Virus record (IMG/VR): IMGVR_UViG_3300020608_000013 | Coordinates: 62,001-126,000 of that record | Direction: 5' to 3' (one strand) | Length of the DNA: 64,000 bases | In this document: one piece after another, positions 938-44,250 of the stretch | Layout of the letters: each line of letters starts with the position of its first letter | Numbering within the stretch: position 1 is the first letter of the stretch | Notes under the pieces: model-generated | What the model was told of the DNA's origin: nothing | Databases searched by the model: none | The model's input: the letters and a program-made list of their open reading frames with translations, nothing else | Translations under genes and position numbers: made by a program

Positions 938-971
938 AAATTGATTATCCTCTTTAGTAAAAGGTTTAAAA

Positions 972-2713: not shown

Positions 2714-2719
2714 ACAGAA

Positions 2720-2754: not shown

Positions 2755-2761
2755 CTTTTAC

Positions 2762-3631: not shown

Positions 3632-3710
3632 AATCACACCTATACTTAAAGGTTGGTTAATATGAAACGCATGAATACGTTTCATATTATATAAACCATA
3701 AAGTATTTCT

Positions 3711-19115: not shown

Positions 19116-20483
19116 TTAATGGTTAGCGAAATTGAATATAGCTTTTAAATTACTAGAGAAATCAGTAATCTGTTCACTCGTCATTCTTAAAGGACTAAGT
19201 AGGTCAGTCCCACACTTAGGGAAAACATACTCTTGATAGCTATGTTGATCGCCAGCTAATCCAATTTTAATTACATGTGACTCTCTTGTATCACATGTAA
19301 AGACGTAGGGTATCTCAGAACCCTTACTGAGCGTCTTATAGAAAGTTCGTAAGTGACCTTCTAGACACTTTGTAAGCTCTGGGGTAGCTAAAGTATTGCC
19401 ATTGTTACGTAGTATATACGTAACAACGATGGCTATTTTTTCACGCCCAAAGTTATCCACTTCTCCTGCGGCTGTCGCCGAAAACGCGGCAATATTAAAC
19501 TTCCTATGTATGTTAGGAATTTCTTTATTCAAAGTAGCCGCGCCATGGGATACTAAATCACCTCCACTACCACAATCCGTATCGAACTGTTTATTGAAAG
19601 TAAGCATTTTATTTGGATAGTACTCTAAAATATTATCCATTTGTGGATTCAGCTTTACTAAATCCTGATAATCGAATTGTAACGGGTCGTCGTACGATGA
19701 ATAATTCTTCATCAGTCTGAAGAAATCATCGCTGTACCGCACATCTCCTTTCACTAAGTATGCGCTTCGACGACTTACGTCACCATCATCGGCCAATTTA
19801 TCTAAAGTTTTACCGTGGGTGTAGGCTTGAACTAAATCAGACGAAAACTCTATAGGGCTATCCCAGCCCTGTGAATACATAGCGCTCGCGCCCTGATATA
19901 GGATAGTGGTCTCGTCGATAACATCTTGACTAGACCAGTTATCCTTTTCATCAAAGTACATAGACAGAGGCATTTCTGCATGTCTATTAAGTACACCAGT
20001 GACACTGGCGAGATGTACGTCTTCCCCACGGTCATCCTTTTTCGGACTAATTGTGACGTAAGTTTCGTCATCCAGTTTACTTTTATCTATCATAGGGATT
20101 TTAGTTACCCTTTCTACATGAAAGGTAATATCTGGCGGTAGTCTCTTTTTCAAAAGTAACTCCGATGACGGCGGCATATTTTCAGAATAGACATCTACTT
20201 CATATCGTACCCGTATGTTACGGGCAGTGGTATGCGTGAAATGAATTTTAGCCAGTAATCGATCTATCGACCAACCGCCTGGTATCGAGACTGTACTGGT
20301 TTGGTGGGATAAACCTGCGATGCTTTGGTCGCTGGCACCGTTTAAGATTTGGAGCGTTGAGGTGGTTGGTTCCACACTCATTCTACGCCCCTTTACTGCC
20401 GACGCGAAACCACCATAGGGTTTAACCTTCATCGATGTGATTGTAAACAGTGGCTTATTCGCCATATTTGGTAATTGTAACAT
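19116..20483 (-). CDS. picA: PicA/Imp1-like phage-nucleus protein import factor (phiKZ gp69 position)
   Basis: 455 aa; directly follows the gp68-like gene in the conserved block. Assignment is by synteny and size, not alignment. Confidence 0.6.
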   Translation of the reverse strand: MLQLPNMANKPLFTITSMKVKPYGGFASAVKGRRMSVEPTTSTLQILNGASDQSIAGLSHQTSTVSIPGGWSIDRLLAKIHFTHTTARNIRVRYEVDVYSENMPPSSELLLKKRLPPDITFHVERVTKIPMIDKSKLDDETYVTISPKKDDRGEDVHLASVTGVLNRHAEMPLSMYFDEKDNWSSQDVIDETTILYQGASAMYSQGWDSPIEFSSDLVQAYTHGKTLDKLADDGDVSRRSAYLVKGDVRYSDDFFRLMKNYSSYDDPLQFDYQDLVKLNPQMDNILEYYPNKMLTFNKQFDTDCGSGGDLVSHGAATLNKEIPNIHRKFNIAAFSATAAGEVDNFGREKIAIVVTYILRNNGNTLATPELTKCLEGHLRTFYKTLSKGSEIPYVFTCDTRESHVIKIGLAGDQHSYQEYVFPKCGTDLLSPLRMTSEQITDFSSNLKAIFNFANH

Positions 20484-20485
20484 TG

Positions 20486-21877
20486 CTACCTCTTTTTATC
20501 AATTAAGATGTCGGCGAGAATATACCGAACATCTTTGTTAATTTCTAAAATTTTGTTATCTCTGTACGAATAGTAATCGTACCCGTTTATTAATGCGGTC
20601 ACTTGTCCTATATATGTAACCACCCCTTCGTCACTTAGAGTTTTCACTCTATCTATATCGTCTTTCGTCGATTTTGTCAACCTCCTGGAAATGTGCAACT
20701 GTAAATCTATTTTTTTATGACATACTGCTAACATTATCTCGCTTATTAAAGATGAGAAGTGTACTTTAACATATAACGAGGCTAGGTATGTCACACGATA
20801 AATATCTTTATCGAGAAACTCGATCATTTGAGGGGCAAGCCCATTTAGTATAAACACCCATTTTGTAAGAAGTATGGATGGTTGATTCACATCACCCCCT
20901 ACTGTAACACAGGTGTTGTAATACATCTCATACTCTTCTTCATTAATCAATGAACGATCCAACCCCAGATACTCAGGTAAGTTGGTGTTTAAGAGAAATT
21001 TTAGCTCTTCTATTTCACCCGCACTTAACTTACGCGCCCCTTTAATCGCCTCATAAATAGAAATTTTATCGTTAGGGTTTTTACGAGCATTGTCTAATGA
21101 CTGACTCATATCCCTCCACTTACTCGTGGTATTTAATTTAGCCAACACAGACCTATATATTCTCGTAATAAGGTTATCCTCACCATCGATAGGTGCGAGC
21201 GGTGCAGTTCTGACCAATACCATTGAAAGTAAGTACTCGTTGAGTGTTATAGAAGTTATCTCCGTATCAATCGCTAACTGAGGGTTAACTTTAACATCTG
21301 ATAAGTAGGCTGTGTATCTACTGACCTTTGCGTATGGCGGGAGTTTTTTTATATCGTCTTCCAGTAAATCGACAATAACTTGCGAGTATTTGTATGTACC
21401 GTATAACCGCGAGTAAGCTATTATCGCAGTTGCCATAATAGGACTAATACCCCTTAAAGCTATAATAAAACCTATTAATTCTATATAAGCTTTATTGTCA
21501 TAGGTTAAATCCTCATGGTATTTATAACTCCATTGCCCATTTTTTTCAACATCAATTTTTGGTAAACAATCTAAGGCATACTGCCTGTATTTATAAAATA
21601 TTCTAAACGCGATTGAGAAAATAGAACTTAACTTCTCAGTGTGTTCAAGGGGTGTCTCTAATAATATGTTCGCATATTTAAACATATCAAATAGAGCACG
21701 ACTAGTTTCATCGTCCAGTTTCCCCAAAAGAATATTAATCACTTCGTACGGATCGTTTTTAAAACTAGGTCTACTGTAACCTGAATTAAAACGAATGCAT
21801 TCACCTTTATATAAAACTTCTATATATAAAGGCGAGGGATCATATAACCCACTTACCCTATAATTGATTTTACTCAT
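20486..21877 (-). CDS. Non-virion RNAP promoter-specificity (sigma-like) subunit (phiKZ gp68 position)
   Basis: 463-aa helical protein with GGAGG RBS and its own TATATTAT motif; syntenic between chmC and picA. Confidence 0.6.
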   Translation of the reverse strand: MSKINYRVSGLYDPSPLYIEVLYKGECIRFNSGYSRPSFKNDPYEVINILLGKLDDETSRALFDMFKYANILLETPLEHTEKLSSIFSIAFRIFYKYRQYALDCLPKIDVEKNGQWSYKYHEDLTYDNKAYIELIGFIIALRGISPIMATAIIAYSRLYGTYKYSQVIVDLLEDDIKKLPPYAKVSRYTAYLSDVKVNPQLAIDTEITSITLNEYLLSMVLVRTAPLAPIDGEDNLITRIYRSVLAKLNTTSKWRDMSQSLDNARKNPNDKISIYEAIKGARKLSAGEIEELKFLLNTNLPEYLGLDRSLINEEEYEMYYNTCVTVGGDVNQPSILLTKWVFILNGLAPQMIEFLDKDIYRVTYLASLYVKVHFSSLISEIMLAVCHKKIDLQLHISRRLTKSTKDDIDRVKTLSDEGVVTYIGQVTALINGYDYYSYRDNKILEINKDVRYILADILIDKKR

Positions 21878-21894
21878 AAAATACCTCCATATAA

Positions 21895-21902
21895 ATAATA
21901 TA
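21895..21902 (-). promoter_or_regulatory. Putative early promoter motif TATATTAT
   Basis: AAACA-TATATTAT, 18 nt upstream of the gp68-like start; one of seven similarly placed copies. Confidence 0.55.
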
Positions 21903-21924
21903 TGTTTATAAATATATAAATTAG

Positions 21925-21955
21925 ATAGCGTGGTAGGTCTTACCTACTACGCTAT
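21925..21955. terminator. Terminator hairpin downstream of chmC
   Basis: 14-bp stem ATAGCGTGGTAGGT/ACCTACTACGCTAT (one non-Watson-Crick position) with a 3-nt loop. Confidence 0.65.
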
Positions 21956-21959
21956 ATGT

Positions 21960-22571
21960 TTAATAAGGTATTTGATCTGAGTAATCATCTGCGTTGTTTG
22001 ATGTATTACTATTATAACCGTTGTTCTTATCATTACCAGTTGGTACTTCTACTTTACCTGCCTCTATTAGATAAGTTTGTCGCATGTGTTCAACATCAAT
22101 CACTTCTTGACACCTTAGTAAGGTATCGCACCAATTACGGAAAAAATTCGTCGAAACTACATTAAGCGGTACCTCCGCTTTATTTAACATAAGTTTAACC
22201 CAAGGGGGCGGGCGAAAGTTTATTCTTGTAGTTCCGTCCTCTGTTTTCATCAGAATGTTAAAAACACCTCCCTCATCTTTACTAAAAGATAATATTCGGC
22301 TTTCCTCACTATCTTTCGTCTTTACAAGAATCGTGTAGTCTGTACGACCCTCACGCTCATTCATTTTATCAGTAATCGTTTTGAACGCCACAAAGTTGTT
22401 CTTATGGGTAGACAGTTTAAGATTATTACCATCTTCACGTTGGTGTGTCCAATAGTTAAACGTGAATAAACTTGTTGATGGCGAATACACTACATGGATA
22501 GTTCCTTTATCATTAGAGACTCGACAATCTGGTATACTAATGAAAATTGGGGGGGCTTCTTGTTTTCGCAT
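21960..22571 (-). CDS. chmC: ChmC-like nucleic-acid-binding protein (phiKZ gp67 position) with N-rich tail ending DDYSDQIPY
   Basis: Beta-rich core, Asn-rich disordered tail, SSB-like acidic C-terminus; syntenic just before gp68. Confidence 0.6.
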   Translation of the reverse strand: MRKQEAPPIFISIPDCRVSNDKGTIHVVYSPSTSLFTFNYWTHQREDGNNLKLSTHKNNFVAFKTITDKMNEREGRTDYTILVKTKDSEESRILSFSKDEGGVFNILMKTEDGTTRINFRPPPWVKLMLNKAEVPLNVVSTNFFRNWCDTLLRCQEVIDVEHMRQTYLIEAGKVEVPTGNDKNNGYNSNTSNNADDYSDQIPY

Positions 22572-22604: not shown

Positions 22605-23441
22605 TTAATTATACTTGTATTTAATTACAGGTTTTATAAAATCACGGAGGTATGGGTCGTCTTCACGACTCAGTTGTTGTTTAACGAGACCGACACCCGT
22701 AGAAGGTGTCCATCTATATTTCCTACTAAGTTGTTCGACAATTAACCTAGTTTTAATCGGTGCTGCGGTATAGGTCGCACGATCGCCAAAAACTAAGAGT
22801 AGTATAAGGTTAAAAGGTAGTCTTGAAAGATCAATGTTCGTCTTACCTGCTCGCTTGACATATTTCGTATTCCATAAATCATGCGTTTTAACTTTACCCG
22901 TATGTGTTTCAAGTAAACACGATCGTCTATCTGCAATAACGAGGTCATTAACGCGGTGGGTTATTATTAACCCACGTTCTATGCGATAAAGGCGTTCCGT
23001 ATATACATAGTCACTCGATAGCGTAAAGTTATTAATAAAGCTCTCTAACACAGAGTTTGTATATCGTACAACCTTCGCTTTTGATTTACGCAAAAAACGT
23101 TTATCTATATCCACTTCACTTTGTTTAAAAAACAATACCTCTTTATCTTTTGTTGATTCATTTAACTTAAATGTATCTTGTAGTAACTCTAACTCAAGTA
23201 TTAGATCGTCAACAAACAAAACATCTGCAACATCTTCCACGCGTGTAAAACTGGTCACATAATTACGGACAATGGTTTCAATATTTATATAAATAGTTTC
23301 GTACGCGCTCACATCGGGTACGGGTAATGGTTTATTCTCACCATTAACCTCTTCAGTTGGAGAATACAATCCTTCGAGACCTAAAGATGTCCCAATAGAA
23401 AGACCGCTATCACCAACCTCCCTCTCATTGTTCTTGCTCAT
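22605..23441 (-). CDS. Conserved phiKZ gp66-like protein, possible PIN/FEN-fold nuclease
   Basis: 278 aa, YINIETIVRNY motif, follows sbcD as in phiKZ. Confidence 0.5.
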   Translation of the reverse strand: MSKNNEREVGDSGLSIGTSLGLEGLYSPTEEVNGENKPLPVPDVSAYETIYINIETIVRNYVTSFTRVEDVADVLFVDDLILELELLQDTFKLNESTKDKEVLFFKQSEVDIDKRFLRKSKAKVVRYTNSVLESFINNFTLSSDYVYTERLYRIERGLIITHRVNDLVIADRRSCLLETHTGKVKTHDLWNTKYVKRAGKTNIDLSRLPFNLILLLVFGDRATYTAAPIKTRLIVEQLSRKYRWTPSTGVGLVKQQLSREDDPYLRDFIKPVIKYKYN

Positions 23442-24510
23442 CTATTATATTTTTAAACTCCTCTTTTAGTAATATAGGACTATCCACGACAGATAGTTCA
23501 GGCTCAACTAGAAGCTTGTAAAGCGACTCTGGTGTGTAATGGTGTTGATCTGTCGTAGTATATTCCACTATGACAGACTGAGGTTTTTCGACCATCTCCA
23601 TTTCATACTGTATAATGTAAGTAGGGTAACGTCTATCAATCTCTCTAAAGACATTAGCTAGATACAACGCCTCTTTCATAATAATTTTGAATTGAGACCC
23701 ACTTTTAACATGACCTACTCGTTCAATCTCACTGTAAAGCATCATTAGATCATCAGCTTCGCTGTTAATTGTTATGAACGGTAATGCGTTATCATTATAA
23801 AGTCTTTGATAGGTTGCCTGATCACCTATTAAAGTGCTCAATACACCACCCTTACGCTCACTTTCCCCAAAACGTATACGATCGAAAGAATTTGTTGAAA
23901 TAATTCGATCAAATGTTTTATCGTTATGGATGTGTCCTGTATGAATAAAATATCGAGTGATTGCTAAATAAGCGACTGACGAGTGTGCGGCTGCTGAAGT
24001 AACGGGTAATTGAAAATCAAATTCTCCGTGTACAAAAGTATAGTCCACTTGGTCGAGATTACGCTCCTTTAATAATTCGTACACTTCTTCTAGCGTTTTA
24101 CTACTATCACCATTCCATCGATCTGGAATAAATAGCGCATTCAACCCATTTTCTAAAGTGACGATGGATAATTTATCAATGTAGTATACTATCGCATTAA
24201 TGCCGAACAGGTTATTGAAATGTCGAAATAACTCGTGTTGTTTCCAATCGTGCGAAGGTGTACCGTTTAGTAAATAAGTGACAATCCCTTTACTCTTAGC
24301 AAAATGGAGATACCACCTAATGAACTCGTAAAGCGCCAATGATGCTTTAGAATACATTTGTTGCTGTCCATCTGTAAAATCACCTAAAAAGAAAACATAA
24401 TCAGGAGTATGTTTTTCAACATACTCCTTTAACCAAACTTTTAGATTATCTAATATAAAAGGATTGCGCTTATGCCCACTATGGACATCGCTCACAATAA
24501 GAAATACCAT
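23425..24510 (-). CDS. sbcD: SbcD/Mre11-like metallophosphoesterase nuclease (phiKZ gp65-like)
   Basis: VSDVH, LGDF, NGTPSHD, VHG and HTGHIH metal-binding motifs. Confidence 0.9.
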   Translation of the reverse strand: MVFLIVSDVHSGHKRNPFILDNLKVWLKEYVEKHTPDYVFFLGDFTDGQQQMYSKASLALYEFIRWYLHFAKSKGIVTYLLNGTPSHDWKQHELFRHFNNLFGINAIVYYIDKLSIVTLENGLNALFIPDRWNGDSSKTLEEVYELLKERNLDQVDYTFVHGEFDFQLPVTSAAAHSSVAYLAITRYFIHTGHIHNDKTFDRIISTNSFDRIRFGESERKGGVLSTLIGDQATYQRLYNDNALPFITINSEADDLMMLYSEIERVGHVKSGSQFKIIMKEALYLANVFREIDRRYPTYIIQYEMEMVEKPQSVIVEYTTTDQHHYTPESLYKLLVEPELSVVDSPILLKEEFKNIIDEQEQ

Positions 24511-25085: not shown

Positions 25086-25870
25086 TCTTCAATCACCTTC
25101 GTTTTAAATTCACTTAATAATAAATCAATTACTCTATTCATACCATCAATTAAACGACGCTCTTTTCCTAACGCAATTAAAAGACCTTTAGAGCAATTAA
25201 TGTAATTTGCTTTAATAGCGCCCAACTCCATACGTTGCGTCTTTGTTAGAGTATTGCCTATTGTTACTAGACTAACTAAAAAACCTACATCTTTTTCAGG
25301 CGAACCGATGCGTCGTGTAATTCTAGGTAGCGCTTTCTCGATAACAGCTACGTTTTTATCGAGTGTCCCTATCCAATCTGTTTTTGAAAATGTTTTAAAA
25401 AAATTACCAAAAACAGGTGCTGTGCCACTCCCTACATGTAACGTAGTTAGTGTGTTCTTAGGATCAACATTTTCATTCAATTCATGGACAGCATTATAAA
25501 AACTGTCAACCTCCTCATTATATTTCTCACACTGAGTAATAAAAGACAATAACCCATCTTGATAAAGTTGCACCTCTGAAGACTTAAGTGTTCTGTGATC
25601 GAGTAATAGTAGATTGATGTTAACCACTAAACTCTCTCTAGCAGAGGCTAGATTAGCGAAACTATCCATTACCCAATTGAGTGTCTCCACATAATCTAAT
25701 AGCGTAACCGTAGTCCCTGTCAGTCGTTTGATATTAGAGTGGAATGTTATATCGAAAGCTATATTATTTTTAGCCTTCACTAATTGCTTAACTGTGCTTT
25801 TATCTGCATTAGTAAACAGTTTAAGTATGTCACGCACACCCTCTAAACTATACCCATCATTCATTTTCAT
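25082..25870 (-). CDS. Hypothetical helical protein
   Basis: Start taken at ATG 25870 (or 25864) to reduce overlap with the upstream gene; inside the coupled operon. Confidence 0.6.
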   Translation of the reverse strand: MKMNDGYSLEGVRDILKLFTNADKSTVKQLVKAKNNIAFDITFHSNIKRLTGTTVTLLDYVETLNWVMDSFANLASARESLVVNINLLLLDHRTLKSSEVQLYQDGLLSFITQCEKYNEEVDSFYNAVHELNENVDPKNTLTTLHVGSGTAPVFGNFFKTFSKTDWIGTLDKNVAVIEKALPRITRRIGSPEKDVGFLVSLVTIGNTLTKTQRMELGAIKANYINCSKGLLIALGKERRLIDGMNRVIDLLLSEFKTKVIEE

Positions 25871-26273
25871 ACACTCGTTTAGTATAAGTACCATACGTTA
25901 CAATGCGGTTTAGGTTGACTGTCTCGCCTTTATACGCTAAACCTAAGTAGATGTTTAGAATAGTGTTTGTCTTGTCAACCGTTTTTGTATTCTCTGTCAC
26001 CTCGACTTCAACATCGTCGAATACTGTACTATAATATCGTTTTATAGACAGTGTTATTTTCCGAATAATTTCATTAATGTCACTACTCCCGACACTCATC
26101 ATTACGTTCGGTAGGGAGTCAACATATTGGTATAATTCGTACGATTGTGAGTACTCGCTACATAGATAGTATGCGAACATTCTATCGGCAATAGCGAGTA
26201 GATCGAGTGACGGAGACAACATCACTGTCTCATCTAACGTTAATAAAACAGCGTTGTTTCCGTCATCATTCAT
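25857..26273 (-). CDS. Conserved phiKZ gp62-like small protein
   Basis: 138 aa, GGAGG RBS in the upstream gene's 3' end; syntenic. Confidence 0.55.
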   Translation of the reverse strand: MNDDGNNAVLLTLDETVMLSPSLDLLAIADRMFAYYLCSEYSQSYELYQYVDSLPNVMMSVGSSDINEIIRKITLSIKRYYSTVFDDVEVEVTENTKTVDKTNTILNIYLGLAYKGETVNLNRIVTYGTYTKRVYENE

Positions 26274-26897
26274 TTAAAATTTACCTCCTAGTGGGTCTGT
26301 AGGATCAAGGCCGTCCTCAATCATCAATTCTTGAAGCGCTTGTGCCTCAAGTAAATCTAGGCGATCGTTGTTTTCTATTTTTTTCGGTAAAATACTCGAA
26401 CGGTACTTCCTTGCCGAGTACTCACCTACTTCATGTTGAAGCCTTGCACCATTGTTAACAGCTTGGTAAGTAATATCTTCCGCTGGTTCTATAGTGGCTA
26501 TTGAACGTGGTACGGAGTCGTTGAATCCGTACAACCGTTCTTGACCAATATATCTTTTAACGACAGGACTCGTTAAAAGATAAGGTCTTAGTTCTGGTGC
26601 GATCAATTGTATTTCTTTAGTTTCTAACGCTTCCTCTAGGACAGTAGCGCAATATAAATAACTACTCGTTGAGTTGTAGAGGACATCTAACTCACCCAAC
26701 TCACTAATATTTTTAGTGAGGCTAACGCTACCGAGCGCGTCACTTAGTATCTTTTTACTGATACCCTCATTTACGTTCAATTCAAGCTCACTATTCCTTT
26801 TCTGGAAATACTTCAAGTCATCGACAACTTGCTGATAGTTCCCCGAAGACCCTAATTCAAACCCAAAAAATGCATGTCGTTCATCATATATTTTCAT
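26274..26897 (-). CDS. Conserved gp59/Imp3-like protein
   Basis: 207 aa directly after the gp55-like gene; C-terminal DGLDPTDP motif. Synteny-based. Confidence 0.5.
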   Translation of the reverse strand: MKIYDERHAFFGFELGSSGNYQQVVDDLKYFQKRNSELELNVNEGISKKILSDALGSVSLTKNISELGELDVLYNSTSSYLYCATVLEEALETKEIQLIAPELRPYLLTSPVVKRYIGQERLYGFNDSVPRSIATIEPAEDITYQAVNNGARLQHEVGEYSARKYRSSILPKKIENNDRLDLLEAQALQELMIEDGLDPTDPLGGKF

Positions 26898-28387
26898 TAC
26901 TCGTCCTCATCTAACCATCGACTTATTGTTTCTAGAGCAGGCATCGCTACCTCTACATTTCTACTAATTTTACCAGGCGTGTCTAGAACAAAAGCATTTC
27001 TATAAATATTGAACTTTTCTTGCTCTAACTGCACACGGTCAATTTTAATAGCGCAGGCTATGTGGTCGCCGTCGTGATCACCACTCACAGCAGGTAGTAC
27101 GAGACTATGCACTGAAATAGTGTAGTCGCTCACATTCGACTTCACGCCCCCTATAAAGAACCGATTGCGTGACCCGAACAACATCGTTGGGAAACGCACG
27201 CCTACACCAGGAAACCCTTTAGGACTATAGCCACCCTTAATAAGGCTATCCATTAGACCAGCTAACCAAGGACAATACACATCGTGCTTATAATACAAAT
27301 ATTTTATAATTTGATTATGTGTCCAAGGTTTTTCACCTCGTTCTATAATAGAGCGGTTCATTAGATTTACTAAATGTAATCTAAAAATAGCTATCCCAAT
27401 ATTCCAAGGAATGAATATTTGTTCTGGGTCGGAGAAGCGCTCTACCGAGGAAATGACAGCATACATAGTGAAATTACTACGTGAGGCGAATATATGTTTA
27501 CGATATAAGCCCTCAGGACCGCCTAAGCGATCTTTTATTTGTGCGTCGTAATATTTTATTAACAACATATATGCTTTACTCAAGCGATTCTCATCTCGTT
27601 TTTCAGGGCGTTGTGTGGTTAAATTACGCAAAACGATAATAGCCTGTGTAGCACTATCTGTGGAGAAATCGAGATAGCTACACATACTAAACTCTTCGAG
27701 AACAATTAGGTGTTTATCAGGTAATGGTAAATGTACTGACAAGAAACTCTCGTGATAGGCCATGAACAGTTCATGGAATATTTCACTACCCTTCTTCTTA
27801 AACTTCTTACACCCATTTAACTTTTCATAGATTTCAAGATAATTCTGTGTGAAGTAGGTTAGTCCTCGTTTAATACCTAAACTCTCAACTGTTTCGTAAA
27901 GCATGGCAGCTTTCGCATTAGCGGGTTTATCAATACTCGTGTCAATCAAGTATTCAATAATATTTGTCCTGAATACCGTAAAACGATCCATTAACTTGGA
28001 TAACATTTTCATATTCGGGTTAAGGGACATACCCTCTAATTGCTTAAACCACAACCGTGTCCCGTCAGGTATACTAGGCGCATCTTTAACAGGCTCGTTG
28101 CATTTTGGACATATTCTACCCACAAGATGTGCGCCTTTCAACGCAATGTTTTCAGGACAAGCGCACTTAGGTATGTATATCCTATCACTGTCGCTGTCAG
28201 TATAACTCACACTGACCAGTTCTCTCATTTTTGTCGTTGGAGGGACGGTTGATAATTCTACTACACGGTACAATTTCGCCATCCGTTCGTAGTACTCATC
28301 GCCATTCACGACTACTTCAATAACGGGCACATTCTTACTCCTATTAATTTCACGAACAAAAAAAATATAGTCGTCATGCGTTAACAT
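26897..28387 (-). CDS. Non-virion RNA polymerase beta' subunit, N-terminal/catalytic part (phiKZ gp55-like)
   Basis: Zinc finger PKCAC...ICPKC, GLYRKHIFASR, RFPTM, catalytic DxDGD as SGDHDGD. Confidence 0.9.
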   Translation of the reverse strand: MLTHDDYIFFVREINRSKNVPVIEVVVNGDEYYERMAKLYRVVELSTVPPTTKMRELVSVSYTDSDSDRIYIPKCACPENIALKGAHLVGRICPKCNEPVKDAPSIPDGTRLWFKQLEGMSLNPNMKMLSKLMDRFTVFRTNIIEYLIDTSIDKPANAKAAMLYETVESLGIKRGLTYFTQNYLEIYEKLNGCKKFKKKGSEIFHELFMAYHESFLSVHLPLPDKHLIVLEEFSMCSYLDFSTDSATQAIIVLRNLTTQRPEKRDENRLSKAYMLLIKYYDAQIKDRLGGPEGLYRKHIFASRSNFTMYAVISSVERFSDPEQIFIPWNIGIAIFRLHLVNLMNRSIIERGEKPWTHNQIIKYLYYKHDVYCPWLAGLMDSLIKGGYSPKGFPGVGVRFPTMLFGSRNRFFIGGVKSNVSDYTISVHSLVLPAVSGDHDGDHIACAIKIDRVQLEQEKFNIYRNAFVLDTPGKISRNVEVAMPALETISRWLDEDE

Positions 28388-28402: not shown

Positions 28403-29605
28403 TTAGAAGAACAGAGTTCGAGGGTTGGCGCTCTCCTCAACACCAAGGTCCATAGCGAATCCGCCTAGACCCCCAAAGATGTTATTACCAACTTGACCAA
28501 CATTGGTAGAGTAACCGTTGGCATTCATAACCTTTTCGGGCGGGATTACAATGTCACAACCAATCCCTGTTACTGTAAAACCGAAAGTAGTGGAGAATTT
28601 TAGTAGGGATTGAATTGAGTTTTGACTTTCAATAAACCCTGGAGCTTGATCTCTCGCATCATTTGCGAGACGAGACACCTTTAGGAAATTCCCAATGGCT
28701 TCATTATTATAGTCGCCGATTAAGATTGGGACTACTCGATCTCCCTTATATTGCTTAAACAGTCCCCGTGTGTAGTCGGACTCCCGACTAGTGACAGCAC
28801 TCAAAATACTATCGATCCCGAAACCAGTGAGGAATTCTCTCACGTCATCAACCGTCGAAACGGTCACGTTCTGTTCTACCAGAGCTTCCAAGCGCTCTGT
28901 GGCGAGCGCCTTCAAGTACGTCTTCGTTTTCGTAACGAAGTTGAGCGCCATGAGCGCAATACGCTCATACATATCAGTGTCTAGTGGAAGACTATTAGAT
29001 GTAATACCTGTTACGGTATTGACGAGGAATCGCGATCTTGAATCCGCGATGATCTTACTATCCACGAATACAGTGTAGCTCCCACCGTTTTGAGGGGCTG
29101 CAACCTCAAGAACTTGATTGTGCGGGACATAATTCCCAAACAATCGCGCATTTGGCATTTTAACACCATTACTAATGTTATAGTGGTGCTTGGTTTTGTC
29201 CCCCAACACAGTGTCTAGGGATGAGTTTATAACCTGATTAAGGAGGGCCTCGTACTCCCCTGGCGGTAGGTTCTCAGGAACCCAAGTCAGACTGATACTA
29301 TTCCCCTTGCCTTCAAAAGCCTCTTTGTTGAGACTTGACATGGGTGTTATCACGGTCGCGTCGTTGTTTAGATAAACAGAAGACTCGATTAATAAGTGCT
29401 CCAGTTTGAAGGGTGTACCACCCTCGTCCTTAACCAACATTTCTAGAGTAATAGCCTCGCGCTCCCCTAGACGGAGTGGACTAATTCTTACGCTTTTCCC
29501 CCATACGCTATCTTCCAGGGCGCTTAAGGCTTTAGCCTGTAAAGAACCTGTAGGGTTAATTCTAGTTAGAAATGGTACTAGACCTGACATGTCACTGTTG
29601 TTCAT
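28403..29605 (-). CDS. chmA: Chimallin (ChmA) phage-nucleus shell protein candidate, unusually short at 400 aa
   Basis: Occupies the chmA slot directly upstream of the gp55-like gene, with AGGAG RBS and TATATTAT motif. Terminal segments GLVPFLTR...AKALSAL and SIQSLLKFSTTFGFTVT...VGNNIFGG resemble the ChmA ends as I recall them. Confidence 0.65.
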   Translation of the reverse strand: MNNSDMSGLVPFLTRINPTGSLQAKALSALEDSVWGKSVRISPLRLGEREAITLEMLVKDEGGTPFKLEHLLIESSVYLNNDATVITPMSSLNKEAFEGKGNSISLTWVPENLPPGEYEALLNQVINSSLDTVLGDKTKHHYNISNGVKMPNARLFGNYVPHNQVLEVAAPQNGGSYTVFVDSKIIADSRSRFLVNTVTGITSNSLPLDTDMYERIALMALNFVTKTKTYLKALATERLEALVEQNVTVSTVDDVREFLTGFGIDSILSAVTSRESDYTRGLFKQYKGDRVVPILIGDYNNEAIGNFLKVSRLANDARDQAPGFIESQNSIQSLLKFSTTFGFTVTGIGCDIVIPPEKVMNANGYSTNVGQVGNNIFGGLGGFAMDLGVEESANPRTLFF

Positions 29606-29657
29606 TTAATTGCTCCTTGTTAATGAACGTTGCTAATGAGCAAGTAAGCTCATATTT

Positions 29658-29665
29658 ATAATATA
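29658..29665 (-). promoter_or_regulatory. Putative early promoter motif TATATTAT upstream of chmA
   Basis: AACCG-TATATTAT, 53 nt upstream of the chmA start. Confidence 0.55.
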
Positions 29666-29751: not shown

Positions 29752-30813
29752 ATGTTAAGAAAATATTTCGATAAAATAAGTGGTACACACGTTAGTACCT
29801 ACGCAAACGATGATTGGTTACGGCGTACCGTTAGTATATCATCAGCGCAAGTCCGACGATATTATATGTACTCAAACCATTATATAAAAACCGAGCATTT
29901 ACTCGTTAGGTTTTTACGTTCCCTTGACCTTCCAATTGAGAAAAGTAAAGAGGCTTATTTAAACCACGCTAAAGTACAAGGTATGCAACTGAGTAAAGTT
30001 TTCCAATTCACTTCACCGTTACAACTTGGTGTGCTCCACGATGATGTATTGTATAGTGGTAAACACCTTATCTACACTTTTAAAGGTAGTTCAAATAACC
30101 AGGTTAGTTGGTATCGACGAAAACCCATACGTTTAATCTATACGCGTGCAAACTACTTAGACTTCCCGCCTCTACACGGTATATTGCCGAGCACCATGAC
30201 AATCATATCGATTAACTTAATAGACCTTATGAGTATGTATTATGAATATAAGGTACACCGTTCTCGTTTAAACAGTCTTTACCGAAAAGTTCGACCCGAT
30301 TTACCTATTTCGGCAGGACATTTTATAAACACAATGATACTACCTTCCTTATCCGTCGATTCTTTTTTAAGTACAATAACAAACAATATTATTAAACCAA
30401 AATCGAGAGAGAAGGCAAATATACACTCTTTCACATTAAGGGAGTATACAAAAGAATTTGATGAAATTATTGAAAACTACCGACAGAATGTAGTGTTACA
30501 GGGTAGTGATTATAACACTGCTTTAGTTAACTACCCTAATTTACTCTACAAGCAACCTAATGGGTTCTTATCCTATAAACTACCCTTTAGTACCTTTAAC
30601 ACTATATCACGGCTTGTAGCTTACCTCATGCGGTTAGACCATATGTATAGTTATATCCATCTAGACCGTGAAGGATTTAAACAATCTAATGGTAGTGAAT
30701 ACTATTACCTCACTCGTTTCTCTCGTTTACTTAAACGTGATAACCAAATGAAGACCTTAGTAAGTGCCTTTAACGACACCGCTTTAGAAGAACGTTTTAA
30801 CTACTTTTTATAA
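29752..30813 (+). CDS. Conserved phiKZ gp52-like protein
   Basis: 353 aa, divergent from chmA; assigned by synteny. Confidence 0.55.
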   Translation: MLRKYFDKISGTHVSTYANDDWLRRTVSISSAQVRRYYMYSNHYIKTEHLLVRFLRSLDLPIEKSKEAYLNHAKVQGMQLSKVFQFTSPLQLGVLHDDVLYSGKHLIYTFKGSSNNQVSWYRRKPIRLIYTRANYLDFPPLHGILPSTMTIISINLIDLMSMYYEYKVHRSRLNSLYRKVRPDLPISAGHFINTMILPSLSVDSFLSTITNNIIKPKSREKANIHSFTLREYTKEFDEIIENYRQNVVLQGSDYNTALVNYPNLLYKQPNGFLSYKLPFSTFNTISRLVAYLMRLDHMYSYIHLDREGFKQSNGSEYYYLTRFSRLLKRDNQMKTLVSAFNDTALEERFNYFL

Positions 30814-30827
30814 AACGACGTAAAAAG

Positions 30828-30852
30828 CAGGGATCGCGAAACACGATCCCTG
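30828..30852 (-). terminator. Rho-independent terminator
   Basis: 9-bp stem CAGGGATCG/CGATCCCTG; AAAAAG to the left gives a U-tract on the minus strand. Confidence 0.65.
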
Positions 30853-31236
30853 AATATATGAACAACGTACAATTCCCCCATTGGCACTGTCTAAACCAGA
30901 GCTTGAGGAGTAGGACCGCAAAGTCACTACAATCTATTATATAAAATAGGTGTTGTTATTCGATAATCTAATCTAGACCTTCTCAACAACTAACATACTG
31001 GGTTATGCACAAACCTATCTAACATGATAAATCACACTTAGTGAATATTACTTATTATCTCTTTTTCTACTATACACTGGTAGTCAAACTTAGTGTAACC
31101 TAAACACTTTAACATTGTTGGATAATCTATACAGATGATTTACCATTAAACACTATTACTAAATTCATCTACACAATACCTATCCTTAGTCTATGTGTTA
31201 TTAATTCATCTTCTATCTGATTATACAAGATGGAAA

Positions 31237-31329
31237 ACTAAACTATAAATACTATCCTTTAAAACAGGGCTACCCCCCCCCCAAGTATGCTTAGTTTAGT
31301 GTTTGATGGCTCGTTCCTTCGTAACTCGT
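31237..31329. repeat. Structured poly-C element, copy 1
   Basis: ACTATCCT..AGGGCTAC10AAGT inside stem ACTAAACTA..ATACT/AGTAT..TAGTTTAGT, followed by box CTCGTTCCTTCGTAACTCGT (31310-31329). Confidence 0.8.
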
Positions 31330-31454
31330 ACAATACATTACAACACAAGGTATAAAAATACAGAGTGAAAAATAGGCAAGAAAAAAATAAGGACACAAAT
31401 AAAGTGTACTACGACATTACGCCATAGCACACTCGGTGGGTTAAGGTAACTTAC

Positions 31455-31940
31455 CTATTTACATAACGACGATCTTGTTTTTACCGAAAGTTGATAAACA
31501 TCGTCAACTAAATGGTAGGTCACGTTGAAGGTTTTAAAAACATCACCTCCAAAAGCTCTCATTAGGGCATCAACGTCTATGGGTGTACTACTCCCTATTA
31601 ACTCAGCCACATATTCAGTAGGCTCTTTAGTCTTCAGACCCACAAAATTTAAAAGGTCGTACTTGTTCACCCATCTACTAAAATACGGCTCTACCCGCAC
31701 TAACTCCTCATCCACCTTTCCTATATGGACTATCGCGTCTATACTCCCCTCATGCCATGTAATTTCAAAACGTTTAACTTCGATAGCATCGTAGCCATAG
31801 TGATTATCCAATACTTCATTTATACCATATACATCCCCTTCACCACACCCAGTGGTGACGACATCAATCAGTTCTAAGTGATCGAAATCGTATACTTCGC
31901 ACAATCCTTTACAAAGGTGGACTTTCATTGATTTAAACAT
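31455..31940 (-). CDS. Hypothetical acidic protein; the only convincing gene in the non-coding island
   Basis: 161 aa, GAG RBS and TATATTAT motif upstream. Confidence 0.7.
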   Translation of the reverse strand: MFKSMKVHLCKGLCEVYDFDHLELIDVVTTGCGEGDVYGINEVLDNHYGYDAIEVKRFEITWHEGSIDAIVHIGKVDEELVRVEPYFSRWVNKYDLLNFVGLKTKEPTEYVAELIGSSTPIDVDALMRAFGGDVFKTFNVTYHLVDDVYQLSVKTRSSLCK

Positions 31941-31987
31941 AACGCTATCTCTTAATGGTTATTGACTACTCCATTATAGTCATGTCT

Positions 31988-31995
31988 ATAATATA
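31988..31995 (-). promoter_or_regulatory. Putative early promoter motif TATATTAT
   Basis: 48 nt upstream of the ATG at 31940. Confidence 0.5.
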
Positions 31996-32421
31996 CCCGT
32001 ATACCAATCTATATTAACCACGATACTTCACTCGACAGACACAAGTAGACCACCTGTAACGCCTTAACGCTACTGATGGTTATACTACGTTCCAACAACT
32101 CACTCTACGCTATCTACAGTCCACGTTATAAGGTTTTCACAACCTAAGTGATGCCTAACCTCACTATCGTGTTATAAACCCTCTCCCTACTCAGTATACC
32201 TTTAACCTTTCTACGACGTTATTACAGTTACCTCACTTTGGTGTTATCAGACCAACCCTAATGACCCATAGGGCATAGGGATAGACATAACGGATACTGT
32301 ATACCTTATGGCTTAACGTTATCACTATGTTATACTTTACCTTAATCGTCTACCTTCGTCTTCCTATATGCACCCAAGGCACGGAAGGTATTATATATCA
32401 TCATGATTACACTATAGGTTA

Positions 32422-32518
32422 ACTATATTACGACACTATACACTATCCTCTTAAGAAGGGCTACCCCCCCCCCCAAGTCGTAATATAGTAGAAGAGGACT
32501 CGTTCCTTCGTAACTCGT
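32422..32518. repeat. Structured poly-C element, copy 2
   Basis: ACTATCCT..AGGGCTAC11AAGT inside perfect 13-bp stem ACTATATTACGAC/GTCGTAATATAGT, followed by the identical box CTCGTTCCTTCGTAACTCGT (32499-32518). Confidence 0.8.
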
Positions 32519-33239
32519 TCAACACATAAATAAAGATTGGGGTTGCTATTCGGTATGGGTAAAAAGTAGTCAACTTAAAATAGACCTCAGTAGTCATCTA
32601 CAGATGGTTAAAAAATAGGCTTAAGTAACACACCTCTGGTAGCGGTCTCACCCACCAGACTAGACTCATGTCGAGAAGGTAGTCTAGACTAACCAAGTGG
32701 TACACTAACACAATAACACAGTAAAGCTAGGTTTACCTACCAGTCTAGGCAGAAAGTCTAGAATGGGTAACAGAGTCACGCTTTGTGCTTAGGGAATATT
32801 CTCTACCAGGTTAATAAACGTGCTAATCGTTAAAGTTTCTGGCCAGTCTACTAACCCTTATATTTTTAATATTAGTTAGGTTATTTAGCCTTAGCTTACA
32901 CGCTTAGCGAAGGGGGTAGTTAATGTACCGTTATAAACCTCTCAGTGACGCTAGATTGATTTTTTAACCCTATAGGCAAGCTTACCTACTACCTAGCGTG
33001 GTGATGGGCACTATAGCCCTTTAAAACAGATTTAAGCAATCAGTGTACATACGCCATTGTCAATGACCTTTAACGAGTTTTTGGGTTAGTCACGACACTT
33101 TCTGGCCATTAGTTTCAGAGGACTACCGTAGACCTTATTCCAGCGATCGATCATTGATCAGACGATCTGGAATTAGTCCCTAACGGTGTCGTTTTTAAGG
33201 GTTTTATAGGGTGTCTAACTATTGACCATTTTAGGATAT

Positions 33240-33279
33240 ACCCTTCTATATATAATCTATAGATTATATATAGAAGGGT
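33240..33279. repeat. Perfect 40-bp palindrome with no spacer
   Basis: ACCCTTCTATATATAATCTA|TAGATTATATATAGAAGGGT equals its own reverse complement. Confidence 0.95.
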
Positions 33280-33354
33280 GGATGGAATCTGAAAAATGGT
33301 ACTTTTAGGTCGTGTTATACAAGTAGTCGCGCACGCCCGCATGGTTCCTATTTA

Positions 33355-33381
33355 GTTTATAATATCTAAGATATTATAAAC
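33355..33381. repeat. 13-1-13 palindrome flanked by GC-rich CGCG tracts
   Basis: GTTTATAATATCT-A-AGATATTATAAAC. Confidence 0.9.
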
Positions 33382-33432
33382 ATGCGCGAGCGCGTGGGCG
33401 CGAACGCGTGCGGTACTTTAGATTTTATTTCT

Positions 33433-34112
33433 AGCGATCGTGATGGTTTAATTCACCGACCTGTTAAAAAAATCAGGTGGAAGCGAAGAACATCGATCGC
33501 TCTTCAGTTCCAAGCTCAGCTCCCTTAGCGAGAGACTACACACCACCCCTGTCTTAAACCCCAGCCGCTGAAAGCTTGGGCTGGGGTTACTTCGATTCAA
33601 CCGTGGAAATTAATAATCACCACCGAGGGCCTTTTTCTAACCATCGAACCAACCCCCCGAAAATTTCAAAACCCTGAAACACAATGGTGAACGTCGTCAG
33701 GTTGAACACCATGACTCGTCCTGACTTAGGGGTCAGGACTTCGTGGCATACACAGACCTAGCCTATATCGCTCTGTAATCGATTCTAAGCCATTTTTTAC
33801 CTTGAGATGATTCATGTTAGGGGTAGGGGTAGATAAAGGCGATATGAGCTTCTGAGGGCTATAGAAAAAAGATAAACCAAACTAAACAAAACCGAAGGTT
33901 TATCACTAAAATCCCTCGAAGAGGGGATAGAGCGTCTGCAAGACAAAAGTATTATAACCCCGCGACCCCAGGCGAAAAAAAGCGCTGCGAGCGAAACTGG
34001 AGAAAACTGAAAGGTAGATTGTGCGCTATATGGGCGTGAGATCGCCATACAGACGTTTTAGGGGGCTAGCCTATGTTTTGGTATAGGTGGGTGTTATAAA
34101 GTGGCTTAAAAT
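33433..34112. ncRNA. Candidate structured non-coding RNA or ssDNA-structured origin segment
   Basis: Stems at 33433-33501, 33557-33588, 33684-33712, 33718-33739, 33871-33904 and 33911-33928, plus long-range pairing 33782-33796/34098-34112; no credible ORF. Confidence 0.4.
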
Positions 34113-34148
34113 GCATTCTACGGTATTTTAGCATTTTGAGTAATGTAG

Positions 34149-34168
34149 TGATAATTGATCAATTATCA
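34149..34168. promoter_or_regulatory. Perfect 20-bp palindrome, operator-like
   Basis: TGATAATTGATCAATTATCA, about 105 nt upstream of the 34275 gene. Confidence 0.6.
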
Positions 34169-34274
34169 TTCACTATTAAACGACAAATCACTTTGAAAAA
34201 TTTTAATGGTGTTGTGCTGTAGTACAAGATCGGTGTTTTGATAAATTGTTAAAAACAAAGGAGTTATTAAGGAA

Positions 34275-35108
34275 ATGGATACGATTAACGGTGTTATAAA
34301 TGCCATCAAGCATCAGATACCTCGGGCGATTCTAGAAGAAACGTTTAATGAACCTGATGCTGGGTTGTTACGCAGTATCGATGATGGAATTTACCGCAAT
34401 GTGATACTAGGTCGAGTCGTTCTAGATTGTAACCTAATCGGAGGTGAAGAGGCTTTAATTTACATAAGTCAAAGCCAAGCCGAACGGGTTAATGACATGG
34501 TGTCGCTTTATGATATACCTGATAGTGCGACACAAAACAGAGAGGTTATATCGCCACTTAGCGTGACTTATGCGACCTCATTAATGTCTAACGCAGGGTC
34601 TAGTCTTTCGATGGGTAGGGCACGGCACATGGGCGCTTCTCAATCGTCTGGTGGATGTAGTCAGAGTGAGCTTTTAAAGCAAGCTAAGAGTATGTTAGAC
34701 ACGATGAAACCATTACCCGTACTTTCCCACACTAACCTGAAAATGACCGCACGTAACGTACTAAGAGTGACGGATAGTAGTGGTATTTTTGGTGATTTCA
34801 TTCTTCGTTGTATCTTGGGTAATTCAGCGAATATGGAGAACCTCCAACCCTACTCTCGATTAAATTTCAACGAGCTTTGTGTACTGGCTTGTAAGGCGTA
34901 TTGTCATAACGAACTTGTCATTAAGCTGAATAAACAAAAAATTGCGTATGGGCAAGGTCTAGGGGTTATAAAGGATATTGTCGATGAGTATAGTGAGGCG
35001 AATGAACTTTACTTAGATTATCTGAAGAATGTGTGGACGACCGTTGCTTTTTGCAATGACCGCGATACCTACCGTAGATTTATCTCGTTGCAAATACCTA
35101 ATTTTTAA
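34275..35108 (+). CDS. Conserved phiKZ-like core protein
   Basis: 277 aa, AAGGA RBS; N-terminal AIKHQIPRAILEETF resembles a phiKZ-group core family as recalled. Confidence 0.6.
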   Translation: MDTINGVINAIKHQIPRAILEETFNEPDAGLLRSIDDGIYRNVILGRVVLDCNLIGGEEALIYISQSQAERVNDMVSLYDIPDSATQNREVISPLSVTYATSLMSNAGSSLSMGRARHMGASQSSGGCSQSELLKQAKSMLDTMKPLPVLSHTNLKMTARNVLRVTDSSGIFGDFILRCILGNSANMENLQPYSRLNFNELCVLACKAYCHNELVIKLNKQKIAYGQGLGVIKDIVDEYSEANELYLDYLKNVWTTVAFCNDRDTYRRFISLQIPNF

Positions 35109-35722: not shown

Positions 35723-35761
35723 AATGACATAGTTTAACTACTATGTCATTCATATAATATA
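35723..35761 (-). promoter_or_regulatory. TATATTAT motif (35754-35761) followed by an 11-bp leader hairpin (35723-35750)
   Basis: Stem AATGACATAGT/ACTATGTCATT lies immediately downstream of the motif on the minus strand. Confidence 0.5.
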
Positions 35762-39985: not shown

Positions 39986-40041
39986 TACATGTCCTCTTGT
40001 TTTTTAAAAAAAAGATGTTTGAGTTTAGTAAACTCATTATT

Positions 40042-40049
40042 ATAATATA
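40042..40049 (-). promoter_or_regulatory. Putative early promoter motif TATATTAT
   Basis: AAACC-TATATTAT upstream of 39985, followed by a small hairpin at 40020-40036. Confidence 0.55.
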
Positions 40050-44193: not shown

Positions 44194-44250
44194 AATACAG
44201 TCTTAAACCCATTAGTCTAAGACTGTATTATGAGTCGTAATTATAATATA
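44194..44250 (-). promoter_or_regulatory. TATATTAT motif (44243-44250) followed by a 12-bp leader hairpin (44194-44229)
   Basis: AAACG-TATATTAT; stem AATACAGTCTTA/TAAGACTGTATT. Confidence 0.5.

What the first reader, a model, noticed from the sequence alone, without database searches (positions are those of the whole stretch)
28403..29605. Mini-chimallin: a 400-aa phage-nucleus shell candidate
Seen: a 400-aa gene in the exact chmA slot, with an early-type motif and an intact downstream nucleus block (Imp3-, ChmC-, gp68- and PicA-like). Characterised ChmA proteins are about 630 aa. From my recollection of 201phi2-1 ChmA, its GINSQFTR...ARASEAL and FIEALDRYLAEAGLQIT...IGNNMVSG segments match GLVPFLTR...AKALSAL and SIQSLLKFSTTFGFTVT...VGNNIFGG with similar spacing. 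The lattice-forming ends may therefore be retained while the Q-rich leader and about 180 internal residues are lost. This could be a minimal or ancestral nucleus shell with different lattice or pore geometry.
Basis: partly seen in the sequence, partly recalled or inferred. Interest (0 to 1): 0.85.

Follow-up and report, generated by a model that had tools for sequence, protein, structure and literature searches.

The report
Unrecognisable 400-aa gene in chimallin slot
A complete 212-kb jumbo phage from the nucleus-forming phage lineage has no recognisable copy of the family's shell protein (chimallin); exactly where that gene always sits it carries a real but one-third-shorter orphan gene, which is the best candidate for a very diverged or replacement shell, although homology could not be shown.

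Summary
The observation largely holds. Window 28403-29605 (-) is an intact 400-aa gene with a strong ribosome-binding site and a recurrent AT-rich promoter-like motif. It lies between the same two genes that flank chmA in other chimalliviruses: a divergent gp52-like gene and the nvRNAP subunit. The gp59-, gp62-, SbcD-, gp66-, gp68- and PicA-like genes follow downstream.

The gene is not an assembly error. It is identical in two samples, and there is no room for a longer or split gene.

I tiled the whole contig, whose identical 141-bp ends suggest it is circular. It holds no canonical chmA.

In a survey of 79 related metagenomic loci, 75 carry a 580-739-aa ChmA directly upstream of the polymerase gene. 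This phage alone has an intact slot gene that the ChmA profiles do not recognise.

The claimed homology is not shown:
- The recalled 201phi2-1 motifs score at chance.
- Pfam, PHROG, two custom ChmA profiles, hhalign and an exhaustive 1.84-billion-protein search find nothing.
- AlphaFold without an alignment failed.

Only faint hints remain: a C-terminal tail whose composition resembles ChmA tails and no other tail in this proteome, and a marginal collinear signal (z about 3).

Verdict: a positional counterpart of chmA and a plausible diverged or replacement shell protein. "Mini-chimallin" is unproven.

The parts
28403..29605 (-). 400-aa orphan gene in the chmA position (the finding)
   Evidence: ORF. 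No Pfam, PHROG, NCBIfam, PDB or database homologue. Identical in two samples.
29613..29618 (-). Shine-Dalgarno AAGGAG, 7 nt before the ATG at 29605; in-frame TAA at 29606-29608
   Evidence: Sequence read.
29649..29665 (-). Promoter-like motif TATATTATAAATATGAG (consensus TATATTATA-N3-AYGAS)
   Evidence: 6 exact copies against 0.26 expected. The other copies are at 31979-31995, 35745-35761, 40033-40049, 44234-44250 and 57344-57360, all on the - strand and intergenic.
29752..30813 (+). Divergently transcribed gp52-like gene (phrog_3938), the usual upstream neighbour of chmA
   Evidence: E 3.8e-19. BLASTP E 4e-10 to AgentSmith_97. PhiPA3 gp051 and AgentSmith_97 belong to the same PHROG.
26897..28387 (-). 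Non-virion RNA polymerase subunit (phiKZ gp55 / PhiPA3 gp054 type), the usual downstream neighbour of chmA
   Evidence: phrog_2987, E 2.4e-72.
26274..26897 (-). gp59-like protein (phrog_3254)
   Evidence: E 1.8e-5; maps PhiPA3 gp055 to the same PHROG.
25857..26273 (-). gp62-like protein (phrog_3294)
23425..24510 (-). SbcD-like nuclease (phiKZ gp65 position)
22605..23441 (-). gp66-like protein (phrog_3229)
21960..22571 (-). 203-aa gene in the gp67/ChmC position; no detectable similarity
   Evidence: PhiPA3 gp061 is phrog_3284; this protein has no hit.
20486..21877 (-). gp68-like nvRNAP-associated protein (phrog_3209)
19116..20483 (-). PicA (phiKZ gp69 / PhiPA3 gp063)-like protein (phrog_3141)
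   Evidence: E 9.8e-8; BLASTP 1.6e-7. PMC11087766 describes PicA as shell-associated and conserved in all ChmA phages.

Best explanation
The 400-aa gene is the positional descendant of chmA in an unusually fast-evolving, streamlined member of the nucleus-forming phage lineage. It has diverged beyond sequence recognition and lost about a third of its length, but it probably still makes the protein shell around the replicating phage DNA.

Proposed mechanism, with each step marked:
1. The injected virion RNA polymerase transcribes it early from the AT-rich motif 44 nt upstream. The motif is shown; the timing is inferred.
2. It is translated efficiently from a consensus Shine-Dalgarno site (shown).
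3. Protomers self-assemble into a lattice by docking their glycine/asparagine-rich, low-charge C-terminal tails, which end in aromatic residues, onto neighbouring protomers, as ChmA does. The tail composition is shown; the docking is inferred.
4. The retained PicA-like and gp59/gp68-like proteins work at this shell for import and transcription. Their presence is shown; their function is inferred.
For: Position and context:
- Both flanking genes are the ones that flank chmA in phages as distant as PhiPA3 and Bacillus phage AgentSmith.
- All 14 cultured-phage loci fetched have a 602-711-aa ChmA upstream of the polymerase gene.
- Of 79 IMG/VR loci, 75 have a profile-positive ChmA of 580-739 aa directly upstream. 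Three more have one further upstream behind small inserts. In one locus only its end is visible at the contig edge, one locus is cut off entirely, and L088 has none within 4 kb.
- No canonical chmA or PF25677 hit occurs anywhere in the 212,020-bp contig, and the target has no paralogue. The identical 141-bp ends suggest a closed genome.
- The polymerase subunit nests inside the ChmA-bearing clade when rooted on PBS1 and BpSp (SH-aLRT 95), so ChmA was probably ancestral to this lineage.
- A PicA-like gene is retained. PicA is reported as shell-associated and present in all ChmA phages (PMC11087766).

Why divergence is plausible:
- The polymerase terminal branch is 1.77 against a median of 0.25.
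- This phage has the lowest polymerase similarity to both references. In phages with polymerase scores of 180-255 bits, ChmA pairwise scores have already fallen to 31-63 bits.
- Other nucleus-block proteins are also shorter than in PhiPA3, and several are unrecognisable.

Sequence hints:
- The last 45 residues are 33% G/N/Q and 13% charged, and end in LFF. ChmA tails average 34% and 12%, and 71 of 86 have an aromatic residue among the last three. The phage proteome averages 14% and 26%. None of 157 other proteins reaches the target's ChmA-tail score.
- Capped-gap collinear chaining against the 20-sequence ChmA profile gives z about 3. At most 1 of 36 real phage proteins reaches it, and reversed and unrelated profiles give z about 0-1.

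Expression signals: promoter-like motif and Shine-Dalgarno site.
Against: No profile similarity of any kind:
- Pfam, PHROGs and NCBIfam give nothing.
- hhalign probability is 0.2-0.5%.
- hmmsearch with 20-sequence, 86-sequence and sister-clade ChmA profiles reports nothing, even at E<=1000 for the last two.
- Sliding sub-profiles place the target no higher than rank 259 of 4995 sequences.
- phmmer against 1.84 billion representatives and against PDB chains finds no relative.

Weakness of the hints:
- The z of about 3 appears with one profile only. It is 0.8-2.5 or negative with the 86-sequence profile and about 0 with the sister-clade profile.
- Real, very divergent ChmAs cut down to 405 aa still give z of 9-16. 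If this is a ChmA it is far outside the known range.
- The match of target 279-319 to conserved ChmA residues was found post hoc.

Other points:
- The protein is 400 aa, while all surveyed ChmAs are 580-739 aa.
- No structural model is available: AlphaFold2 gave pLDDT 31.
- Tail composition is not evidence of homology.
Confidence: 0.42

Rival explanations
1. chmA was lost and an unrelated early gene now sits in the vacated position, for example a host-takeover or anti-defence protein. This phage makes no chimallin-type nucleus, or relies on another protection such as the early membrane vesicle alone.
For: - There is a complete lack of profile similarity, even though the same profiles detect every other ChmA surveyed, including ones Pfam misses.
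- The protein is a true orphan.
- Several other nucleus-block proteins (gp63, gp64 and gp67/ChmC positions) are also unrecognisable.
- No PhuZ-like tubulin was found, although that was a weak single-query test.
Against: - The PicA-like, gp59-like, gp62-like and gp68-like genes are retained in order. PicA is described as working at the ChmA shell (PMC11087766).
- The gene keeps chmA's exact position, orientation and own promoter-like motif.
- Its C-terminal tail resembles ChmA tails and no other tail in the proteome.
- Loss of the family-defining protein has not been reported for this lineage (PMC10299810, PMC12908238).
Confidence: 0.3
2. Non-homologous replacement. A protein of independent origin has taken over the shell-forming role, making it an analogue of chimallin rather than a descendant.
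For: The contextual evidence is the same as for the best explanation. In addition, sequence similarity in the folded part is absent.
Against: - In-place replacement of a protein with many specific partners (PicA and other shell-associated proteins) is less parsimonious than divergence.
- There is a faint collinear signal with the ChmA profile.
Confidence: 0.13
3. Artefact: a truncated, frameshifted or mis-assembled chmA.
For: It is shorter than any known ChmA.
Against: - The gene and 146 nt upstream are identical in two independently assembled samples.
- An in-frame stop lies directly upstream. The intergenic space to the divergent neighbour is 146 nt, and the polymerase gene starts 16 nt after the stop, so no space is left for missing exons.
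- No ChmA-like fragment occurs in any frame of the window or the rest of the contig.
Confidence: 0.02

Closest known systems
Chimallin (ChmA; Pfam PF25677, phrog_4795; 201phi2-1 gp105, phiKZ gp54, PhiPA3 gp053)
   Same: - Genomic position between the gp52-like gene and the nvRNAP subunit, and orientation.
- Its own AT-rich promoter-like motif.
- A G/N/Q-rich, low-charge C-terminal tail ending in aromatic residues.
- Co-occurrence with PicA-like and other nucleus-block genes.
   Different: - 400 aa rather than 580-739 aa.
- No Q/P-rich N-terminal leader.
- No hit to any ChmA profile.
- The conserved ChmA motifs were not recovered above chance.
Divergent metagenomic ChmAs of the apparent sister clade (loci L037, L042, L047, L050, L059, L064, L077-L079; 659-688 aa)
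   Same: - Nearest polymerase relatives in the tree.
- Already the most divergent ChmAs seen, at 143-204 bits against the 20-sequence profile.
   Different: - They are full length and clearly ChmA (E 1e-44 or better).
- Their own profile shows no similarity to the 400-aa protein.
msRNAP jumbo phages without chimallin (PBS1, AR9 and other Takahashivirus phages)
   Same: They encode split multisubunit RNA polymerases and lack a recognisable ChmA.
   Different: - This phage's polymerase subunit nests inside the ChmA clade rather than with PBS1 and BpSp.
- It keeps the chimallivirus gene block, including a PicA-like gene.

Membership tests
Chimallin (ChmA) | Sequence membership in the family profiles (Pfam PF25677, phrog_4795, custom 20- and 86-sequence profiles) | tested here: not met
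   The same custom profile detects all surveyed ChmAs at E<=2e-31.
Chimallin (ChmA) | Length and two-domain architecture (about 600-700 aa reported; 580-739 aa in this survey) | tested here: not met
   400 aa. PMC12625630 states the 600-700 aa range.
Chimallin (ChmA) | Conserved position immediately upstream of the nvRNAP subunit, same strand, with the gp52-like gene divergent on the other side | tested here: met
Chimallin (ChmA) | Extended N- and C-terminal segments that dock onto neighbouring protomers | tested here: inconclusive
   The C-terminal tail composition resembles ChmA tails and no other tail in the proteome. Motif-level alignments are at chance. There is no Q-rich leader.
Chimallin (ChmA) | Fold: N-terminal alpha+beta domain plus acetyltransferase-like C-terminal domain (from my knowledge of the published structures) | not testable with these tools
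   AlphaFold2 without an alignment gave pLDDT 31. No homologues exist to build an alignment.
Chimallin (ChmA) | Self-assembly into a square lattice enclosing phage DNA | not testable with these tools
   Needs experiments.
Chimalliviridae (the phage) | Multisubunit RNA polymerases, phiKZ-type capsid and inner-body proteins, conserved core blocks | tested here: met
   PhiKZ_MCP and phiKZ_IP Pfam hits; phiKZ_gp29PR, PhiKZ_VTX; polymerase tree.
Chimalliviridae (the phage) | Encodes a recognisable chimallin | tested here: not met
   The whole contig was scanned in six frames.

The most novel reading that the evidence does not exclude
This is a new, minimal (about 400 aa) phage-nucleus shell protein. 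It is either a chimallin descendant stripped of its leader and roughly 200 internal residues, or an independent replacement. Either way it would build a compartment with different protomer size, lattice spacing or pore geometry, while still working with a PicA-type importer.
Probability: 0.45. Interest if true: 0.85.

Novelty: new variant of a known kind. Interest (0 to 1): 0.65.

Why it matters
Chimallin defines the nucleus-forming phage family and is reported as present in every member. Published surveys look for it by profile, and one considers only proteins of 500-800 aa (PMC12625630), so a phage like this would be missed.

A genome that sits inside the family, keeps the import and transcription block, and yet has only a short unrecognisable protein in the chimallin position leads to one of two conclusions:
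- It shows how far the shell protein can be reduced. That would reveal which parts are essential for lattice formation, selectivity and partner binding.
- It is the first case of the nucleus being lost or replaced in this lineage.

Either outcome bears on how this compartment evolved and on how such phages escape DNA-targeting bacterial defences.

Tried and rejected
- Direct similarity gave nothing. I tried BLASTP against PhiPA3 ChmA, tblastn against 50,697 phage records, PDB phmmer, the k-mer search of 5.8 billion proteins, exhaustive phmmer over 1.84 billion representatives, and NCBIfam and PHROGs at E up to 1 and 10.
- AlphaFold2 on the single sequence gave pLDDT 31 and is unusable, so I ran no fold search.
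- I ran no further search on the target aligned with ChmA sequences. The alignment would dictate the model, so the result would be circular.
- Closer relatives to bridge the gap were not found. The polymerase k-mer search found only itself. IMG/VR relatives are at most 30% identical. The metagenome and genome scans found nothing closer.
- A ChmA alignment was too diverse for pattern scanning.
- A second chmA elsewhere was rejected after tiling the whole contig.
- Assembly error was rejected.
- The PicA-like protein has no tblastn hit at database scale. Its assignment rests on the PHROG profile, a pairwise match and gene order.
- The motif T.G.F-x21-G.[YFW]-x8-D.R[DE] at target 279-319 looked striking: 3 of 200,000 shuffles and 0 of 1,994 non-ChmA ORFs carry it. 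It was chosen after seeing the alignment, and the corresponding sub-profile is not significant. I keep it only as a lead.

Full report
**What is there**

Window 28403-29605 (- strand) is an intact 400-codon ORF.
- AAGGAG lies 7 nt before the ATG at 29605, and an in-frame TAA sits directly upstream.
- A 146-nt intergenic region separates it from a divergently transcribed 353-aa gene.
- The next gene on the same strand starts 16 nt after its stop.
- JGI called it from the second Met, giving 395 aa.

The window is positions 62,001-126,000 of IMG/VR contig IMGVR_UViG_3300020608_000013 (212,020 bp). In a second sample (3300020607) the same phage assembled as two contigs. The gene plus its upstream region is identical there. 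The gene is real and its length is not an artefact.

**The slot**

The downstream gene is the non-virion RNA polymerase subunit of phiKZ gp55 / PhiPA3 gp054 type (phrog_2987, E 2.4e-72; 27% identity).
- In PhiPA3 that gene directly follows the nuclear shell gene gp053.
- The same order holds in RTH11, RP12, Eowyn, Noxifer, phiKZ, Xoo-sp14, RSL2, RAY, FLC9, SA002, pEa_SNUABM_48 and, with short inserted genes, Bacillus phage AgentSmith. Their ChmAs are 602-711 aa.

The divergent upstream gene belongs to phrog_3938. So do PhiPA3 gp051 and AgentSmith_97, which occupy the same place next to chmA.

Downstream, the order matches PhiPA3 gp055 to gp063:
- gp59-like (phrog_3254) and gp62-like (phrog_3294);
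- two unrecognisable genes;
- SbcD and gp66-like (phrog_3229);
- an unrecognisable gene in the gp67/ChmC position;
- gp68-like (phrog_3209) and PicA/gp69-like (phrog_3141);
- then the large polymerase subunits.

The exception is "ChmC-like", which is positional only.

**Promoter motif**

The sequence TATATTATA-N3-AYGAS occurs six times in the window against 0.26 expected. All copies are on the - strand, in intergenic positions upstream of genes, and one lies 44 nt upstream of this ORF. This fits the published description of early promoters of RNAP-encoding jumbo phages: roughly 10-nt AT-rich motifs near -10 (PMC7598289). Early timing itself is inferred.

**Is it a chimallin by sequence? No.**

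Aligned to the target they score at chance:
- N-terminal: 17 against a shuffle mean of 18.5.
- C-terminal: z 1.6, reached by 73 of 1000 shuffles.

Whole-protein Smith-Waterman z-scores against 20 ChmAs are all 1.8 or lower.

Library and database searches give nothing:
- Pfam (which contains PF25677), PHROGs (which contains phrog_4795) and NCBIfam.
- PDB sequences, the 5.8-billion-protein k-mer search, and exhaustive phmmer over 1.84 billion representatives. The last two return only the protein itself.

Custom profiles also give nothing:
- A 20-sequence diverse ChmA profile (A1), an 86-sequence profile and a sister-clade profile report no hit.
- hhalign probabilities are 0.2-0.5%.
- In twelve sliding sub-profiles from each of the first two alignments, the target never ranked better than 259th of 4995 sequences.

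**Power of these profiles**

A1 detects every ChmA in an independent survey. Of 79 IMG/VR loci recovered through the polymerase gene:
- 75 have a 580-739-aa ChmA directly upstream (E 1.9e-31 to 1e-225);
- three more have one further upstream behind small inserts;
- in L054 only the C-terminal end is visible at the contig edge, and L030 is cut off entirely;
- one (L088) has a tRNA array upstream and no ChmA within 4 kb.

The detected ChmAs include one that Pfam misses entirely (L096). The phage of this window is the only one with an intact slot gene that the profile does not recognise.

**No chmA elsewhere**

I tiled the rest of the contig with 17 overlapping loci. I searched every six-frame ORF of 50 aa or more with both ChmA profiles, with filters off.
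- The best E-value was 1.1, so nothing was found.
- No PF25677 appears in the pre-computed gene tables.
- The target has no paralogue.

The contig's first and last 141 bp are identical, which suggests a circular, complete assembly.

**Where the phage sits**

In a maximum-likelihood tree of the polymerase subunit rooted on Bacillus phages PBS1 and BpSp, this phage falls inside the ChmA-bearing clade.
- SH-aLRT support is 95 for sisterhood with a clade of metagenomic phages. Their ChmAs are themselves the most divergent seen.
- The terminal branch is 1.77 against a median of 0.25, so long-branch effects are possible.

Calibration points the same way. This phage has the lowest polymerase similarity to both PhiPA3 (162 bits; next lowest 199) and AgentSmith (150; next 180). 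In phages with 180-255 polymerase bits, ChmA pairwise scores have already fallen to 31-63 bits. Failure of pairwise detection is roughly what extrapolation predicts. Complete failure of profiles goes further than expected.

Other non-enzymatic block proteins are also at or beyond the detection limit, and they are shorter than in PhiPA3:

| Position | This phage (aa) | PhiPA3 (aa) |
|---|---|---|
| gp67 position | 203 | 252 |
| gp68-like | 463 | 525 |
| PicA-like | 455 | 548 |
| chmA slot | 400 | 602 |

**Hints in favour of a ChmA-like protein**

1. *Tail composition, tested without alignment.*

| Set | G/N/Q in last 45 aa | Charged | C-terminal end |
|---|---|---|---|
| Target | 33% | 13% | ends in LFF |
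| 86 ChmAs (mean) | 34% | 12% | aromatic within the last three residues in 71 of 86 |
| Phage proteome (mean) | 14% | 26% | - |

None of 157 other proteins of 150 aa or more reaches the target's ChmA-tail log-odds.

2. *Collinear chaining.* Large deletions would cripple HMMER scores, so I wrote a local chaining alignment with a capped gap cost.
   - Against A1 the target scores z about 3: 1-3 of 150-300 shuffles reach it, and at most 1 of 36 real phage proteins of similar size.
   - The chain is collinear across ChmA residues about 101-594.
   - Its best ungapped block (target 279-319) matches conserved ChmA residues at the most common family spacing.

3. *Why these hints are weak.*
   - The signal falls to z 0.8-2.5, or below zero at the highest gap cost, with the 86-sequence profile. 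It is about 0 with the sister-clade profile.
   - Reversed and unrelated profiles give 0-1. Real, very divergent ChmAs artificially cut to 405 aa give z of 9-16.
   - The motif was picked after seeing the alignment, and its sub-profile is not significant.
   - I count all of this as a lead, not as evidence of homology.

**Structure**

AlphaFold2 on the single sequence failed (mean pLDDT 31). No homologue exists to build an alignment. The metagenome and genome scans brought nothing closer. I did not feed the target with a ChmA alignment, because the result would be circular.

**Interpretation**

Four points make this gene the positional counterpart of chmA and the best candidate for the shell protein:
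- the position;
- the absence of any other chmA in the contig;
- the placement of the phage within the ChmA clade;
- retention of a PicA-like gene, which the literature describes as shell-associated and present in all ChmA phages (PMC11087766).

My estimates for what it is:

| Reading | Probability |
|---|---|
| Extreme, shortened descendant of ChmA | about 0.42 |
| Unrelated early protein left after loss of the nucleus | about 0.30 |
| Independent replacement that still forms a shell | about 0.13 |
| Artefact | about 0.02 |

The remaining probability is not assigned to any specific reading.

**Comparison with what is known**

Published definitions and surveys of the family rely on a recognisable ChmA (PMC10299810, PMC12908238). 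One survey also filters for 500-800 aa (PMC12625630). A case like this has not been described in the papers I could search.

Noticed in passing
window 31246-31338 and 32437-32527 (within 30813-34275): Two copies of a roughly 95-nt element (73-84% identical), each containing a run of 10-11 C. They lie 1.19 kb apart in a 3.4-kb stretch that holds only one ORF over 100 aa. The second sample's assembly breaks here (about window 31,300). The stretch has no Rfam family, no tRNA and no similarity to known phages.
   Followed up: partly
window 33240-33279: A perfect 40-nt palindrome (ACCCTTCTATATATAATCTAT and its complement, overlapping) in the same ORF-poor region.
   Followed up: no
window 31979-31995, 35745-35761, 40033-40049, 44234-44250, 57344-57360 (- strand): Five further exact copies of the promoter-like motif TATATTATA-N3-AYGAS, each in an intergenic position upstream of a - strand gene. 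Together with the copy at 29649-29665 they define a likely early regulon.
   Followed up: partly
L088 (IMGVR_UViG_3300028549_000365), 1-3800: Another chimallivirus-like contig (222 kb) without a ChmA within 4 kb upstream of its polymerase gene. It has a tRNA array and three small ORFs there instead. Its chmA may simply be displaced.
   Followed up: partly
window 19116-22571 and 28403-29605: The non-enzymatic nucleus-block proteins are consistently shorter than in PhiPA3 (203 vs 252, 463 vs 525, 455 vs 548, 400 vs 602 aa). This suggests lineage-wide streamlining rather than a change confined to the slot gene.
   Followed up: partly
L096:831-2627 and L037:1899-3875: Pfam PF25677 (Chimallin_Phikzvirus) is narrow. 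It misses the L096 ChmA entirely and scores the L037 ChmA at only 30 bits, although a 20-sequence custom profile finds both easily. Surveys based on Pfam will under-count chimallins.
   Followed up: yes
contig ends (L110 and L113): The first and last 141 bp of the 212,020-bp contig are identical, which suggests a circularly closed genome of about 211.9 kb. That is small for this family.
   Followed up: yes
window 26897-28387: The polymerase subunit has a terminal branch about seven times the median of 72 relatives, which marks an unusually fast-evolving or long-isolated lineage. No relative above 30% identity was found in any collection searched.
   Followed up: yes
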